Assembly: GCF_031769215.1 (NCBI RefSeq)
Contig: NW_026782690.1
Coordinates: 186,001 to 250,000 of the forward strand
DNA: 64,000 nucleotides
Source: Ylistrum balloti
Taxonomy: Eukaryota
Reading direction: 5' to 3'
Part shown: positions 42,943 through 62,109 of the stretch, in pieces
Position numbering within the stretch: the first letter of the stretch is position 1
Layout: each line of letters opens with the position of its first letter
Program-made: the position numbers and the translations under genes
The notes under the pieces: model-generated
Seen by the model: only the letters and a program-made list of their open reading frames with translations
Databases searched by the model: none
Told to the model about the DNA's origin: nothing

Positions 42943-43204
42943 NNNNNNNNNNNNNNNNNNNNNNNNNNNNNNNNNNNNNNNNNNNNNNNNNNNNNNNNNN
43001 NNNNNNNNNNNNNNNNNNNNNNNNNNNNNNNNNNNNNNNNNNNNNNNNNNNNNNNNNNNNNNNNNNNNNNNNNNNNNNNNNNNNNNNNNNNNNNNNNNNN
43101 NNNNNNNNNNNNNNNNNNNNNNNNNNNNNNNNNNNNNNNNNNNNNNNNNNNNNNNNNNNNNNNNNNNNNNNNNNNNNNNNNNNNNNNNNNNNNNNNNNNN
43201 NNNN
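42943..43204. other. Assembly gap (262 N)
   Basis: Run of N. Confidence 1.
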
Positions 43205-44165: not shown

Positions 44166-45606
44166 CTAAGCGCACTCTCTTCGACAGTCGCGATGAGACT
44201 TGAACCTGTTCTTATTCCCACCACATCCACGATAGTTGAAAGACTTGCATGAATTTGTAGACTTATCATAGTAAACGCGTTCCACAGGTCCACGTGGGCA
44301 ATGGTGACCATGATCAACCGGTAGTTTACAGTCTGAAATATGATAAAGAAGTGAGTTTACGGACATCCCTTGCTTTCTCTCCTGGCACCAGTTCTGCTAA
44401 GGACATAGTACAAAATATGAGAATATAAAGATATATGAAAATGTACGCACGATGTTTTCGTCTCGTAACACGCAAGCGTTATTTACCCGTTTCTACCGTC
44501 ATAATACACTTTTAAAAAGGGGTGTGAGTGTATGGCTTTATCTGATGTATTTTCAAAGTTCAAACGTAAAAAGTTGACCTTCAATTAATATACATATTGT
44601 AATTTTGTCATCAAGATACCTGATTGAAACTGATGCCGTTTACAAAACTTTTTTTTAAAAATTCAGATATGACAAAGGATCGGCATAAATACATAAGGGA
44701 GGTTAAGATTTCTAGTTAATATAGATATCACTTTCCTATTATTAATGAAACTTTATATGGCAGTCATTAGATAGAGTACTGAAAACAGCACACATAGATC
44801 TGAAAATGAAGAAAGAAAATGAACCTACTATAAATCCCTTAGATTTTGCGAATACTTTATTCCACATTTGCAGACATTTTTTAAATGATTCATATGATTA
44901 CATATACTAAATACCGTTGCCTTTTAGTAATATAATTGGAAATCTTTTAAATATGCCTTGGAAGCAATAATATTGATTTTCGAATCATACTAGTTATTGT
45001 CCATTTATATTTTTCTAATGTGTCCCCTTCAAAAGATCCGGGGTTTTTTCGTCAAATATGAATATTGGAAAATATAATTTAACATATTTCACTTCAGCTA
45101 AGAACGTTAACTCCTGAATCATATTTGTTAGTTATGTGTTGTTTGTACAAATAATGAGAAAAAGAGCACTTTACGGCATGATAATATACTTTTGTGGATA
45201 CAATGCCGAATATAATCCCTAACCGTGCAGCAACAGTAACATGAAAGAACAAGCAAGTCGTTCCGAGGGGTAATCACGAATTCAGATAACCACCAGTTAA
45301 GCAGCTCTTCAACTTTTTCGAGTCTCTTGCTTATAAGTCAGCTGTTTGGAATTATGAAGGATAACGAGATATATTTCAAGTTACTACATATTTAGTTTTC
45401 CTGTAAAATAGCATGGTTTATATAATGCATCTAGTTACCATCAGTTTGTTTCAGATTTCCAGTTCTATTTTGCATGCAAAAACACATCATTTACATTCGT
45501 CGAAATTTTGTAATATTTAAAAAGAGTACTTACGTGCTGGACGTCTGCCTGCCGTCATCCCTACGATAACGAGCAATACAACGGCGACTATGAGAGTTGT
45601 CTTCAT
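44166..45606 (-). CDS. Secreted single-domain Kunitz/BPTI protein, atypical loop, 79 aa
   Basis: Exon 1 45606-45534 (MKTTLIVAVVLLVIVGMTAGRRPA, signal peptide, donor gtaagt, phase 1); exon 2 44332-44166 (acceptor tttcag). Six Cys plus FNYRGCGGNKNRF. Confidence 0.9.
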
Positions 45607-57702: not shown

Positions 57703-60295
57703 TCATTTGATACTGTGAAAGAAACGCCCGTGAAAAGTCATAGGAACACGTGTCGGTAGGTTCGCTTTGTGAGCAGTTGTCATAGAAACGGCATCAATAA
57801 CGGCAAGATAACTTGCATTCTTCTCTCCATCAAGAACGGGTACTAACAAGAAGCCATCGTCTTCTTTAGGTTTCGACTCGTTGTCGGTAGGAAAAGGAAT
57901 AAACCACATTTCCGCCGGGTAATGATAGCGATAGAACCACATCCGATCTTTTCCATTACCACAAAGATCTTTTTTGACGAGAGCAATGTAGCTATACTGC
58001 GTGTCATCACACTTAGGAACCATACCGTACACGTAGCAGTAATTCCGAGACCGGTAAACTTCGTTGATTACTGGCATGTCAAACTTTGTTACACACGGAT
58101 ACCTGGCCGATTCCGGAAATGACTTCACACTAACCTGCGTTCTGTTTAGATTAATACCGTAACGTGTCAAAATCGAATGTGGATTCAGTTTATTCCTTTC
58201 AGAACGGTTAAGCAAGGTTTCCATGTTCAAGTCGAAGATGAGTGAGGCGTCCGGATATGTTGGTAAGTCTATAATAATTTCTTTTGTCCAAGTCTCGTAC
58301 GCGTTTATATGGTGCATATAGAAAATTGGCGGCGCGCTAAAGGTTCGAACAATCCCAGTCCTGATCTCAATAACATGTATCGTCATGTTCTTCCTTGCAC
58401 CCTGCCATTTCAATCCGTTTGAAATGAATGCAGTTGGTAGGAGTGCTTTCGTGTTGACAAATAGCGGTGGGGAGAAAAATATCACATAGTTTGGAGTAAC
58501 AGAAAAGGAGTGCATGTATGGAACCTCGTGTATGTCCACCGACCACTGCGCCACAACTTCTCGATCATCCGTCGACTTTATTCGGATAAGTGAAATGCGA
58601 TGTTTTACTCCAGGAACAACAGCTACACTGACCAAGTACGTGAAAAGGTGAGGGGTGCCATATTCCGGAAGTGGATGAGCGGACGACATAATATTCTGAA
58701 AAATGAAACTGTTAATACCACCGAAAGATGGCACCTTTGGGTGTTGATACCCAATCGTGTCAAGAGACAACGGGTTGATTTCATAATTATCCCAGATATC
58801 ATTTAATGAAACAAAATCGCCATCTTTATTTCTCTGGGAGGGAAATCGAAAAATGTTCACATTCATGTTGTCCATACTCCGCCACAAGGCTAGCAACACC
58901 TGTAGGTGATTAAACCGTGGATGAGTAGGTCCGAACAGGACGTATGGAGATATATCTTTCTGTGAGATCGACTTACTGTAGAAGTCAGATTTGATGAATT
59001 TAGTAGAGAAGAATACGGAGCCGTTTCCTATAAACCGCCAACTGTAGAGTTTTCCAAATCCGTCAAACATATGAGAGAAGCGGCGATTCCCAACCTCGAA
59101 CTGACCAGGTCCATTTCTAATCTGTATTTAAATGGAAGAGAAATATATTTCGCGTATCTGTAATAATACGATCACTATATCACTACAATATGTATTTTGG
59201 TCACTTGCAAAATATATGTAATTACAGATACAGAATTGTTTGTAACTATATGCAGTATTTCATCATTCGATTAATTAATTTGTTCTAGACGTAGGCCTAT
59301 CGAAGAGCATATCAAAACAAAACAAAACGACATTGCAAAGTCCAGATGTCTTGATGGCGTTTTGTCTTCAAAATAACAAGAGATTTGGTGACCAGGACCA
59401 GTATTCATGAAACCATTATCATGCTCAAGCATAGATTTTGTGCTCAAGAGAATTTTTTTTTTATAATTCGCCTACATCATACAGAATAATACAAATGTCA
59501 AATATAAACATTGAATATAACTTTGACTTGAAGTCCTTTCATACTTTTTTAAAACCTTTGGCAAAATCAGTCTTATCTATCAATTTTTAACTTAAACAAG
59601 ACATAAGGCTTGAGCACAAATATGCTTGAGCAGGAGAACGGTTTCATGAATACGAGCCCAGTGGTCTCTCGTATATGCCCACCAGAATTGGAAATCAAGG
59701 ACTCCTCTACATCGGCCGCATATCTCGATATTTTCCTACTATGAAACCAAAATGGAAAGCTTTCCAACAAGCTGTATGATAAGGGTTATAATTTAAATTT
59801 CCCCATTGTATTTCTTTCTGGATAGTAACATGTTGCATTTGATTCGATATTCCCAAGACTGTTCATTATCTGAGAACAGTTGATAGCTGAGAAGATACTC
59901 GAAGAAAATAGACCTACTTGTGAGACTCTGTTTACTTATGAATCGAATACGTAAATTTATTTTTATGTGTAATATATCGATTGATTGATTGTCAAGTCTA
60001 AATTGAAATCAAGTGCTTCTGTTACTTGGAATAAGCATTTGTGTATTAAAGCAATATAATTATCTGCCGTGCTGTGTTTTTCAAAACATACCAATGTTCC
60101 CGTGATCCATCGAGGTATCGGTTTATCAAAGTGTATGGGCACGTTCTCCATTTCCTCTGTGTTTGTACGAAACAGTTCCTCGAAACCCTTGTCATGCACG
60201 ACATTCTTGTGAGAAGAGCGTGTCCGCAAGCATAATTCTACTCTTGTCCAACACGTCCAGGTGAGGAGAAGGACATTAAACAATGAATGGGTCAT
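57703..60295 (-). CDS. Carotenoid cleavage oxygenase (RPE65/BCO superfamily, BCO-like), 2 coding exons, 540 aa
   Basis: Exon 1 60295-60092 (68 codons, donor gtatgt; in-frame TAA 12 nt upstream of the ATG); exon 2 59121-57703. Motifs IPRWITGTL-IRNGPG, HMFDGFGKL, DNMNVN, and four Fe-ligand His contexts SAHPL, YMHSF, MHHINAYE, TFHGRF. Confidence 0.93.
59320..59830 (+). mobile_element. Decayed Penelope-like RT fragment (mollusc KLYDKRDDFNFPIV type) in the oxygenase intron, split by a MITE
   Basis: Removing 59396-59661 rejoins IAKSRCLDGVLS..NKRFGD (cf. RYIDDVLS) to PPELEIKDSSTSAAYLDI..GKLSNKLYDKGYNLNFPIV. Confidence 0.7.
59396..59658. mobile_element. PIF/Harbinger-type MITE, 263 bp, ~50-bp imperfect TIRs, CAG target duplication
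   Basis: Left gaccagtattcatgaaacc...tgctcaagcata..tttgtgctcaag; the right end is its reverse complement. CAG at 59393-59395 and 59659-59661. Confidence 0.8.
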
Positions 60296-62109
60296 TCTGA
60301 CGATTTAAGTTCTAAAAGTAATCACATAACTGACACTTTCCGACTTGACGTTTCAAATAAATAAGAAATATTTGGATTTGACAAAAAGACTTAACATTTC
60401 ATCGTTCAGAAGAGAACGTCACTATACAAACGATAATTAAATTGTATATTTATTTGTACAGCAGCACATACTTCCGTTCGCCTGACAACTTTAACGAAAT
60501 AGCTACTGAACTATTAAACCTCTAGTTTCTAGTTAGCTGACGCAATGCCATCAGCTCCAGCATGAAGGCTCTGTGTGATACCTGGAGCTCATGTACTTAA
60601 ATATCCTTACTACAGATCTGACGAATCACGGCTGTACATACATCTGTTTGTTCACTACACATCTTCTACAATAGCATTAGACTTTCTATCTAAAGATGTT
60701 ACGTAACGTTCTCGTAAAGAAAAATTAAAACCTCAATTACAAAAAAAAATCATTAAAAAACACTTGTCACTTGTATGCACCTAATGCTGTTTAAAAGGTC
60801 AAATTAAACTGGTGCAGTGTCAGATATAATCACGTCATAACCTTATCTGAGCCATTCTTGTCTTCAATCACGTAAGGTTTTAGGCACTTTAGAAGTTACT
60901 TCCCATGCGAGACTTAATAGTTGAACTAAGGACATTACGTAACACGCTTTCCTGTTCAATTTGAATGATCAAATATCAACCTGAAGGTTTTTCTTTTCTT
61001 TTTAAACAGATTGAAGCTCTTGGTATTTTACTTTAGTATCATTCAATTATTGTGTAATAACTGATAAAACAATCAATTCGGTTCACAATCAGCATGTTTA
61101 GTGGATGTTTGATACTAGCAATAACGATGTGAAGTCTTAGATGGACAATTTGAAACTTGAATTTAAAATGATCTAAACATTAGATTAAAACAAAGACCAA
61201 AAACAAAAAACAAAACAAAAACAAAACAAACATACAAGACATGCCCTCAGGTCTTCCGACATTCACAAGTAATGTTTATCACACTCTTGCGAGTTAGAAG
61301 TTATGAACCGAAGAATATACTTTTGACATGAGCTAGACTTAAATCTCGGATGATATCGAAAAACAGACCCGAAAATAGTGACACATCGCCTTTCCATTCT
61401 AGAAAAAAGCAGTCGATGTCATTAATCTGCATTCAGTAAATAAAAGAAACCTTTTATTTCGATGAGACATTCGTCTTTACATTCATTGTGCGAACTAAAA
61501 AAATATATAATCATCTCTACGCCTTACCATTCTATAGACAAAAAAGCCAGGTTTTCGAGTGAAGTGACACGTTTGTGTTCACGGTATGTTCTTTCTTTAA
61601 CACATACGACAGTCTTCTTCGTTAAGAACACAATGTCAGTGAACTTCGTAGTGTGTATAGTTTATAGGAAAAAATCCCATGAAATGTAGCAGAGAAGGAA
61701 CATTTAACTTATCAGAGGTTCACGGAGAGTACTTTCTACCATCATCAACCTTTCATAATAGAAAACTATTAAGACCAATAAGATCACGCGATGAATTCAG
61801 ATTGTATACATGTAATTAACATTCTTTTTAGAATTAAGAGATTTACAAAATTATGAAGTTTATTGAACATTAATTTATCATAGTCGCCTCATAGGATTCA
61901 AATTCCATTTAATAAAAATAATTAGGGGGAGGGGGTTATGGAAATTAAATTCATCTTTCTTATTCGAAGAAAATTATCTACAGCCGGTAAAAGATACTAT
62001 TTTAGAAACAAAATTACAATACTGTCTTCCAGTGTATAATAGACAACGTATATCTAGTATTCCAGATACAGAAACAGATTTTTAAAACCTTATCTTGTTC
62101 TTTATATAG

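What the first reader, a model, noticed from the sequence alone, without database searches (positions are those of the whole stretch)
57703..60295. Carotenoid cleavage oxygenase that looks secreted or lumenal
Seen: an intact 540-aa RPE65/BCO-family ORF whose start is fixed by an in-frame TAA just upstream. It begins with a hydrophobic segment (MTHSLFNVLLLTWTCW...) placed before the first conserved family motif. It carries five N-x-S/T sequons (NMT, NRS, NRT, NES, NAS). Known: vertebrate BCO1 is cytosolic, BCO2 mitochondrial and RPE65 a cytosolic-face ER protein; none is a secretory glycoprotein. Inference: a non-heme-iron oxygenase acting in the ER lumen, gut lumen, haemolymph or mantle secretion would mean extracellular apocarotenoid or pigment chemistry. 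It may belong to the invertebrate BCO-like (BCOL) assemblage, whose substrates and locations are poorly known.
Basis: partly seen in the sequence, partly recalled or inferred. Interest (0 to 1): 0.72.

Follow-up and report, generated by a model that had tools for sequence, protein, structure and literature searches.

The report
Scallop secreted-type BCOL carotenoid oxygenase
This is an intact two-exon scallop gene for an iron enzyme that cuts carotenoid pigments and looks built for secretion, but it belongs to the BCO-like (BCOL) subfamily, whose secretion, sugar coating and disulfide bond are already published, so it is an ordinary new member of a known kind.

Summary
There is a 540-aa RPE65/CCO-family gene on the minus strand. 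Exon 1 is 60295-60092, the intron is 60091-59122, and exon 2 is 59121-57703. It is identical to NCBI XP_060082507.1 of the scallop Ylistrum balloti. The in-frame TAA (60307-60305) and the hydrophobic N-terminus are real. There are six N-x-S/T sequons, not five.

The protein is a BCOL-type carotenoid cleavage dioxygenase. Its best solved relative is the secreted lancelet BCOLg (9plv, 285 bits, against 76-90 bits for NinaB, nematode BCMO and RPE65). It has the BCOL hallmarks:
- no PDPCK motif;
- Asp at two of the three second-shell Glu positions;
- the Cys pair of the BCOLg disulfide (C430/C455);
- conserved sequons;
- a leader-like N-terminus shared with pectinid orthologues and most molluscan homologues.

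BCOL signal peptides were published in 2017, including molluscan ones. Secretion was published in 2020, and glycans plus the disulfide in 2026.

Caveats: this leader has the weakest hydrophobic core in the family, I could run no SignalP, and I found no RNA run. The scan reached the same verdict on two other BCOL loci of this genome.

The parts
60305..60307 (-). In-frame TAA four codons upstream of the start codon
60092..60295 (-). Coding exon 1 (68 codons): leader plus the first family-conserved stretch (GFEELF ... PRWITGTL)
   Evidence: The same exon is encoded in Pecten maximus DNA at L016:14492-14698.
60230..60295 (-). Signal-peptide-like leader, residues 1-22. The uncharged hydrophobic core is residues 4-17. 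The only site that fits the (-3,-1) rule just after the core is after T17.
   Evidence: It is conserved in P0004, P0005 and both Pecten tandem copies. The second individual shows no SNP in exon 1.
59122..60091 (-). Single phase-0 intron, 970 bp, GT...AG
   Evidence: DNA contigs of another individual are colinear with the genome on both sides of it.
57703..59121 (-). Coding exon 2 (472 codons plus TGA at 57705-57703): the whole seven-bladed propeller
   Evidence: Pfam RPE65 at 2.6e-74. AlphaFold2 model: pLDDT 92, pTM 0.88. Foldseek hits are CCD structures with target-normalised TM-score up to 0.93.
58675..58677 (-). His217, Fe ligand 1 (SAHP). The others are His272 at 58510-58512, His338 at 58312-58314 and His532 at 57730-57732.
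   Evidence: His217, His272 and His338 are invariant in 56 of 56 homologues and His532 in 55 of 56. His338 aligns with BCOLg H328.
58036..58038 (-). Cys430 (NYCYVYG). It aligns with BCOLg Cys422, one half of the published disulfide.
   Evidence: alignment; Cys in 55 of 56 homologues; PMC13734108
57961..57963 (-). Cys455 (KKDLCG). It aligns with BCOLg Cys449, the other half of the disulfide.
   Evidence: alignment; Cys in 54 of 56 homologues
59017..59025 (-). It is the most conserved sequon of the family.
   Evidence: 47 of 56 homologues, with NGS and NGT interchanging. It lies four residues before the glycosylated Asn98 of BCOLg.
58138..58146 (-). Sequon N394-R-T. It lies two residues after the position aligned with the glycosylated Asn383 of BCOLg.
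   Evidence: Kept as NRT, NIT or NES in 5 of 6 pectinid clade members.
58381..58389 (-). Sequon N313-M-T. The further sequons are N373 at 58201-58209, N482 at 57874-57882 and N503 at 57811-57819.
   Evidence: N373 and N503 are kept in 6 of 6 clade members, N313 in 5 of 6 and N482 in 3 of 6. The middle residue and the S/T vary.
59344..59745 (.). High-copy repeat inside the intron, with inverted arms at 59401-59433 and 59621-59653. Not part of the protein.
   Evidence: Summed contig depth is about 3,800 against about 10 on either side. Inverted repeat: 33 nt, 91% complementary.

Best explanation
The gene encodes a BCO-like (BCOL) carotenoid cleavage dioxygenase of the scallop Ylistrum balloti. 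It is a seven-bladed propeller that holds a non-haem Fe(II) on four histidines (H217, H272, H338, H532). These are held in place by D176, D416 and E472. Proposed course, all inferred by homology: the N-terminal leader (residues 1 to about 17-22) takes the nascent chain into the ER. There the conserved sequons (N101 above all) are glycosylated and C430-C455 form the disulfide seen in lancelet BCOLg. The protein has no membrane span, no PDPCK palmitoylation motif and no C-terminal retention signal, so by default it leaves the cell or ends in a digestive compartment. There it would cleave dietary algal carotenoids oxidatively. Shown here: gene structure, family, fold, catalytic and BCOL-specific residues, conservation of the leader, the cysteines and the sequons, and purifying selection. 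Inferred: translocation, glycan occupancy, the disulfide itself, the site of action and the substrate.
For: Family and fold: Pfam RPE65 at 2.6e-74. The AlphaFold2 model has pLDDT 92 and matches CCD structures. Subfamily: phmmer against PDB sequences gives BCOLg 9plv 285 bits (E = 7e-84), archaeal NdCCD 143, NinaB 89.5, C. elegans BCMO 86 and RPE65 76. The alignment with BCOLg is collinear. BCOL hallmarks named in PMC13734108 and present here: D176 (56 of 56 homologues) and D416 (41 of 56) in place of Glu, with E472 kept; PTHPRF where canonical enzymes have PDPCK; C430 and C455 aligned with C422 and C449, and conserved in 55 and 54 of 56 homologues. Those cysteines are absent at the aligned positions of NdCCD and NinaB. 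Leader: 38 homologues have at least 12 residues before the family core. 29 of them pass my strict test and 3 more miss only the run-length criterion, so 32 of 38 start with a hydrophobic leader. The query's leader is shared by Argopecten P0004, Mizuhopecten P0005 and both Pecten genomic copies. Sequons are kept with a varying middle residue and S/T swaps. No 19-residue window exceeds a KD mean of 1.27, so there is no membrane span, and the C-terminus is ...FHSIK. Tree: the protein sits in a pectinid clade of six (SH-aLRT 100) nested among molluscan homologues. These include Lottia XP_009063032.1, a published BCOL with TargetP SP score 0.971. Selection: a second individual has 5 SNPs in 1,623 coding bases against 31 in 2,062 non-coding bases (Fisher P = 1.5e-4). 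Three are synonymous and two are conservative (M435L, V263L). There are no indels and no SNP in exon 1.
Against: The leader is the weakest in the family. Its best 9-residue KD mean is 1.91, against at least 2.4 in nearly all others. It has Asn, Thr, Trp and Cys in the core and no basic residue before it. The site that fits the (-3,-1) rule in Argopecten and Mizuhopecten (V-[ED]-S before C) reads V-E-L here, which is disfavoured. Only T17 fits just after the core. I could run no dedicated predictor (SignalP, TargetP, DeepLoc). No RNA run was found, so the 5' end, the splice junction and expression rest on the NCBI model and on conservation. The sequon count is not above chance. AlphaFold draws residues 2-35 as one helix, which says nothing either way.
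Confidence: 0.8

Rival explanations
1. It is a BCOL by descent, but in this pectinid clade the leader has decayed and no longer works as a cleavable signal peptide. The enzyme then stays in the cytosol or sits peripherally on a membrane through its hydrophobic N-terminus.
For: It has the lowest hydrophobic score among leader-bearing homologues, and the core is interrupted by N, T, W and C. The cleavage motif is degraded from S to L at -1. The clade sits on a long stem branch (0.64 changes per column), which means strong divergence.
Against: The leader's hydrophobic character and length are kept in five pectinid genes despite sequence turnover. The disulfide cysteine pair and five of the six sequons are kept in the clade. 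A cytosolic protein has no reason to keep them. The 14-residue core is too short for a membrane anchor.
Confidence: 0.12
2. The N-terminal extension is a mitochondrial presequence, as in vertebrate and scallop BCO2.
For: BCO2 proteins carry N-terminal extensions, and scallop PyBCO2 is predicted to be mitochondrial (PMC11012205). Residues 18-30 are rich in R, S and T.
Against: Residues 4-17 are uncharged and hydrophobic, not an amphipathic basic helix. There is only one Arg in the first 19 residues, and Glu20 follows. PyBCO2 is a 12-exon gene with PDPCK. This gene has two exons and no PDPCK. TargetP called molluscan BCOL leaders secretory, not mitochondrial.
Confidence: 0.03
3. The real transcript uses another first exon, so that the leader is not translated. 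This is what the NCBI model of the Pecten maximus orthologue does. Alternatively, both forms exist.
For: Pecten model P0002 starts at an exon 4.4 kb upstream (L016:10001-10069). It splices into an internal acceptor (...ctccgcag) just after the leader-coding part of exon 1.
Against: In Y. balloti the corresponding bases read ...ttgcggaca, with no AG, so that acceptor is absent. No match to the Pecten upstream exon was found from 40000 in the window to the contig end. The NCBI model for this species starts at the leader. The ATG has A at -3.
Confidence: 0.05

Closest known systems
Lancelet BCOLg (Branchiostoma floridae; PDB 9plv; Uppal et al. 2026 preprint, PMC13734108)
   Same: Best solved relative: 285 bits, collinear over residues 69-536. 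Both have four His ligands, Asp at two of the three second-shell positions, no PDPCK and the disulfide cysteine pair. Both have an N-terminal leader of about 20 residues. The query has sequons within 2-4 residues of two of BCOLg's four glycosylated Asn (N98, N383).
   Different: The query's exon 2 differs from it at well over half of the aligned positions. Asn110 and Asn438 of BCOLg are not sequons here, and four of the query's sequons have no BCOLg counterpart. The leader is weaker. Secretion, glycans and beta-carotene 15,15' cleavage were shown for BCOLg and for nothing in scallops.
Molluscan BCOLs of Poliakov et al. 2017 (for example Lottia XP_009063032.1 = P0023)
   Same: Same clade in my tree. 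46% identity, E = 4e-129. TargetP called a signal peptide there (SP 0.971).
   Different: The query belongs to a pectinid-only subclade on a long stem branch. Its leader is less hydrophobic and carries a conserved C-W ... C-L-R pattern not seen in other molluscan BCOLs.
Canonical metazoan CCOs: BCO1, BCO2, RPE65, NinaB, scallop PyBCO2
   Same: Same fold and the same four-His iron site. The chemistry is presumably the same.
   Different: Only 76-90 bits. They have PDPCK, three Glu, no leader of this kind and no disulfide pair. PyBCO2 has 12 exons against 2 here. This genome also holds two multi-exon CCO loci, on C249 and C698.
Archaeal NdCCD (Nitrosotalea devanaterra, PDB 6vcf)
   Same: Second-best sequence match (143 bits) and the best structural match available (target-normalised TM-score 0.91-0.93). 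It also has a compact propeller.
   Different: It has Glu at the two positions that are Asp in the query, as the alignment shows. It has neither of the two cysteines.
PyBCO-like 1, causal gene of orange muscle in the 'Haida golden' Yesso scallop
   Same: A scallop CCO homologue distinct from PyBCO2, and involved in carotenoid degradation (PMC11012205).
   Different: I could not establish which Mizuhopecten protein it is, because the 2019 paper is not held. Orthology with this gene is therefore unknown.

Membership tests
BCOL (BCO-like) subfamily of carotenoid cleavage dioxygenases | RPE65/CCO seven-bladed propeller with four Fe-binding histidines | tested here: met
   Pfam PF03055 at 2.6e-74. 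H217, H272 and H338 are invariant in 56 of 56 homologues and H532 in 55 of 56. Model pLDDT is 92, and it matches CCD structures.
BCOL (BCO-like) subfamily of carotenoid cleavage dioxygenases | Closer to BCOL members than to canonical metazoan CCOs (clade membership) | tested here: met
   285 bits to BCOLg against 76-90 bits to NinaB, BCMO and RPE65. It is nested in a tree with the published BCOL Lottia XP_009063032.1. No canonical CCO or lancelet sequence was in my tree, so the placement rests on score ranking and shared derived characters.
BCOL (BCO-like) subfamily of carotenoid cleavage dioxygenases | N-terminal secretory signal peptide | tested here: inconclusive
   The leader looks like a signal peptide on crude measures: an uncharged core at residues 4-17, a (-3,-1) site after T17, and no membrane span. 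It is conserved in pectinid orthologues. It is also the weakest core in the family, and no trained predictor was available.
BCOL (BCO-like) subfamily of carotenoid cleavage dioxygenases | Absence of the PDPCK palmitoylation motif | tested here: met
   The region reads ...FGPTHPRF..., without Cys. BCOLg has VDPPF there.
BCOL (BCO-like) subfamily of carotenoid cleavage dioxygenases | Asp instead of Glu at two of the three second-shell positions (RPE65 E148 and E417) | tested here: met
   D176 and D416 are Asp and E472 is kept. D416 aligns with BCOLg D408 and H338 with H328.
BCOL (BCO-like) subfamily of carotenoid cleavage dioxygenases | Cysteine pair of the intramolecular disulfide (BCOLg C422-C449) | tested here: met
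   C430 and C455 align with it and are conserved in 55 and 54 of 56 homologues. The bond itself cannot be shown with these tools.
BCOL (BCO-like) subfamily of carotenoid cleavage dioxygenases | N-glycosylation | not testable with these tools
   There are six sequons. Five are kept in the pectinid clade, and N101 is kept in 47 of 56 homologues. The count alone is not above chance. Occupancy needs PNGase F treatment or mass spectrometry.
BCOL (BCO-like) subfamily of carotenoid cleavage dioxygenases | Lack of the long 'metazoan loop' of blade IV (RPE65 residues 371-400) | tested here: met
   Query residues 371-469 align with BCOLg 362-463 with gaps of only 1-2 residues. BCOLg lacks the loop.
BCOL (BCO-like) subfamily of carotenoid cleavage dioxygenases | Actual secretion and carotenoid cleavage activity | not testable with these tools
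   Shown only for lancelet BCOLg.
Canonical metazoan BCO1/BCO2/RPE65/NinaB | PDPCK motif, three second-shell Glu, multi-exon gene | tested here: not met
   No PDPCK and two Asp substitutions. Two coding exons against 12 in scallop PyBCO2.

The most novel reading that the evidence does not exclude
The pectinid-specific, fast-diverging BCOL pair may have changed its targeting. This gene is copy A; copy B is present in Pecten, Mizuhopecten and Argopecten and was not found in this assembly. The pair has an unusually weak leader with a conserved C-W ... C-L-R pattern. In Pecten maximus an annotated upstream exon splices in exactly behind the leader. Together these could give one gene both a secreted and a cytosolic isoform, or an uncleaved, retained form. 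That would let scallops cleave their own carotenoids (pectenolone, pectenoxanthin) in two compartments.
Probability: 0.08. Interest if true: 0.5.

Novelty: new member of a known kind. Interest (0 to 1): 0.2.

Why it matters
It adds one well-documented scallop member to the secreted BCOL subfamily. It also shows that the features solved in lancelet BCOLg are conserved across molluscan, annelid and nemertean homologues: the disulfide cysteines, the Glu-to-Asp changes, the loss of PDPCK and a sequon next to blade I. That supports the view that extracellular or lumenal carotenoid cleavage is an old and widespread trait of filter-feeding invertebrates. For aquaculture, BCOL genes are candidates for flesh and shell colour. 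It opens no new question, because the idea, the clade and the first experiments are already published.

Tried and rejected
(1) RNA evidence. The only public run that holds the stretch is DNA of another individual, with contigs colinear with the genome on both sides of the intron. The 5' end and expression therefore stay untested.

(2) Sequon enrichment. It is not significant, so I dropped it in favour of conservation.

(3) The nearest Mizuhopecten orthologue, P0003. Its model lacks exon 1 and its locus is not on record, so I used Pecten DNA instead.

(4) A second tandem copy, or a Pecten-like upstream exon, in this genome. Neither was found, either in the window or in the last 7.2 kb of the contig.

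(5) Mapping PyBCO-like 1 onto the tree. The 2019 paper is not held, and the 2024 paper gives no accession.

(6) Foldseek against PDB. That library ends in April 2026 and lacks 9plv, so the archaeal NdCCD came first. The sequence copy of the PDB does hold 9plv.

(7) Using the AlphaFold helix at residues 2-35 as evidence on targeting. I rejected it as uninformative.

(8) A membrane-anchor reading. I rejected it because no 19-residue window exceeds a KD mean of 1.27.

(9) I did not run the large representative protein search. The word search and the family scans left nothing open.
Full report
WHAT IS THERE. The window is G000:C833:186001-250000 of a 648-Mb assembly. The protein search identifies the organism as the scallop Ylistrum balloti. 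Two minus-strand ORFs at 60295-59963 and 59070-57703 belong to one gene. Exon 1 runs from the ATG at 60295 to 60092 and is followed by gtatgt. The intron (60091-59122, 970 bp) ends in ...acag. Exon 2 runs from 59121 to the TGA at 57705-57703. The intron is phase 0, and the product has 68 + 472 = 540 residues. This product is 100% identical to P0001 = XP_060082507.1, 'carotenoid isomerooxygenase-like'.

HOW THE SPLICED MODEL WAS HANDLED. I handed no typed or joined sequence to any search tool. Where a full-length protein was needed (alignment A1, structure prediction), I used the identical database protein P0001. The exons were joined only inside a local script, to number residues and read SNP effects. 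The masked run at 42943-43204 was left alone.

CHECK OF THE OBSERVATION. An in-frame TAA lies four codons before the ATG, at 60307-60305. Exon 2 matches Pfam RPE65 at 2.6e-74. The protein starts with an uncharged hydrophobic stretch at residues 4-17, which lies before the first family-conserved motif (GFEELF, from residue 37). There are six sequons, not five: N101, N313, N373, N394, N482 and N503. The count is not above chance. Shuffles of the same composition give 4.45 +/- 1.9, and P(>=6) = 0.28.

IS THE GENE ALIVE. No RNA run was found. The one run that holds the stretch is DNA of another individual. Its contigs are colinear with the genome on both sides of the intron. That individual differs at 5 of 1,623 coding bases and at 31 of 2,062 covered non-coding bases (Fisher P = 1.5e-4). 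Three coding changes are synonymous and two are conservative (V263L, M435L). There are no coding indels, and exon 1 is unchanged. The gene is intact and under constraint. Expression and the 5' end remain unverified.

WHICH FAMILY. phmmer against all PDB sequences ranks the lancelet BCOLg (9plv) first at 285 bits (E = 7e-84). The archaeal NdCCD follows at 143 bits, NinaB at 89.5, C. elegans BCMO at 86 and RPE65 at 76. The alignment with BCOLg is collinear from residue 69 to 536. The AlphaFold2 model (pLDDT 92, pTM 0.88) is a CCD propeller. In the Foldseek library, which ends before 9plv was released, NdCCD is the best match (target-normalised TM-score 0.91-0.93), ahead of NinaB and RPE65.

The word-index search returned 170 homologues, almost all from molluscs plus a few annelids and a nemertean. 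One of them, P0023, is Lottia XP_009063032.1. That accession is listed as a BCOL, with TargetP signal-peptide score 0.971, in Table 1 of Poliakov et al. 2017 (PMC5643517).

In a quick maximum-likelihood tree of 41 homologues, the query falls in a pectinid-only clade of six (SH-aLRT 100) on a long stem branch of 0.64. Subclade A holds Ylistrum P0001, Mizuhopecten P0003, Pecten P0002 and Argopecten P0004. Subclade B holds Mizuhopecten P0005 and Argopecten P0006. Pecten carries A and B in tandem. In this assembly only A is found. The genome holds seven further intron-poor BCOL-type genes and two multi-exon CCO loci. The latter correspond in kind to the 12-exon, PDPCK-bearing PyBCO2 of the Yesso scallop (PMC11012205).

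BCOL HALLMARKS, ONE BY ONE. The 2026 preprint on BCOLg (PMC13734108) names these features: a signal peptide of 22 residues; four N-glycans (N98, N110, N383, N438); a disulfide C422-C449; Asp at two of the three second-shell Glu positions; no PDPCK; and no 'metazoan loop'.

- Cysteines. C430 (NYCYVYG) and C455 (KKDLCG) align with C422 and C449. They are conserved in 55 and 54 of 56 near-full-length homologues. NdCCD and NinaB have no Cys at those positions.
- Second shell. D176 is Asp in 56 of 56 homologues. D416 is Asp in 41 and Glu in 14. E472 is kept in 55. D416 and H338 align with the D408-H328 pair discussed in the preprint.
- PDPCK. The region reads FGPTHPRF and has no Cys.
- Metazoan loop. 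The query follows BCOLg without an insertion in that region.
- Sequons. N101 is a sequon in 47 of 56 homologues, with NGS and NGT interchanging. In the pectinid clade N373 and N503 are kept in 6 of 6 members, N313 and N394 in 5 of 6 and N482 in 3 of 6, with the middle residue and S/T varying. That pattern is what is expected of used sites. N101 lies four residues before BCOLg N98. N394 lies two residues after the position aligned with N383.

THE LEADER. 38 homologues have at least 12 residues before the family core. By a crude hydropathy test, 29 carry a hydrophobic leader, and three more fail only on a strict run-length rule. The clear exceptions are truncated or differently modelled N-termini. 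Within the pectinid clade, the leader of the query is matched by those of Argopecten P0004 and Mizuhopecten P0005.

It is also matched in Pecten genomic DNA. L016:14492-14698 encodes a Met-initiated leader in one frame with the rest of exon 1, and the tandem copy does the same at L016:21484-21696. The NCBI Pecten model P0002 lacks the leader only because it starts at an exon 4.4 kb upstream (L016:10001-10069). It splices into an internal acceptor just behind the leader. That acceptor does not exist in Y. balloti.

Likewise, the NCBI model of the Y. balloti paralogue P0011 starts at an internal Met. The DNA upstream continues in frame to an earlier Met with a hydrophobic stretch. Annotated starts therefore under-report leaders in this family.

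WEAK POINTS. The query's leader has the lowest hydrophobic score of all leader-bearing homologues (1.91 against mostly 2.4-3.6) and no basic residue before the core. The V-[ED]-S site that obeys the (-3,-1) rule in Argopecten and Mizuhopecten is V-E-L here. After the core, only T17 fits the rule. No trained predictor was available. There is no membrane span anywhere (maximum 19-residue KD mean 1.27), and there is no KDEL-like end.

MECHANISM. Most likely (0.8), this is a BCOL enzyme that enters the ER through its leader. There it would be glycosylated and disulfide-bonded, and then leave the cell or reach a digestive compartment. It would cleave dietary algal carotenoids with O2 at its four-His Fe(II) site. 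The authors of the BCOLg work propose the same for the lancelet gut. Everything after 'enters the ER' is inference by homology. The rivals are a decayed, non-functional leader (0.12), an alternative first exon (0.05) and a mitochondrial presequence (0.03).

NOVELTY. The signal peptides of BCOLs, molluscan ones included, were reported in 2017. Secretion of BCOLg from HEK293F cells and the phrase 'secreted BCOL subfamily' date from 2020 (PMC7221588). Glycans, the disulfide and the structure followed in 2026. The finding is a new member of a known kind. Two earlier follow-ups of this scan, on other BCOL loci of the same genome, reached the same verdict. I saw them only after my own analysis.

Noticed in passing
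window 59344-59745 (inside the intron): A very high-copy repeat: summed contig depth is about 3,800 against about 10 on either side. It holds two inverted 33-nt arms at 59401-59433 and 59621-59653, 91% complementary. These look like two copies of a short interspersed element in opposite orientation.
   Followed up: partly
L016:10001-10069 and L016:14555-14565 (Pecten maximus LR736852.1): The NCBI model of the Pecten orthologue (P0002) starts at an upstream exon and splices into an internal acceptor (...ctccgcag) directly behind the leader-coding part of exon 1. That gives a leaderless protein. The leader-coding ORF is intact in the DNA. This is either an alternative isoform or a modelling artefact. 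The acceptor is absent in Y. balloti.
   Followed up: partly
L018:4438-4632 (G000:C85, minus strand): The Y. balloti paralogue P0011 is annotated from an internal Met. The reading frame stays open upstream to an earlier Met followed by a hydrophobic stretch, which matches the leaders of its Pecten, Mizuhopecten and Argopecten orthologues. Its signal peptide is probably present but not annotated.
   Followed up: partly
L016:24918-24929 (Pecten maximus tandem copy B): The match to the query changes reading frame between 24918 and 24929. Copy B therefore has either a small extra intron or a frameshift. Its annotated product is 501 aa.
   Followed up: no
window 40000-64000 plus L017 (C833:250001-257202): Pecten, Mizuhopecten and Argopecten have two copies of this gene (A and B), tandem in Pecten and on one contig or chromosome in the other two. 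Y. balloti shows only copy A. No remnant of B was found from 40000 in the window to the contig end, nor elsewhere in the assembly with the Pfam search.
   Followed up: partly
window 42943-43204: A run of 262 N (gap or masked).
   Followed up: no
window 44166-45606: Another first-stage note on this window reports an atypical Kunitz peptide here. I did not examine it.
   Followed up: no
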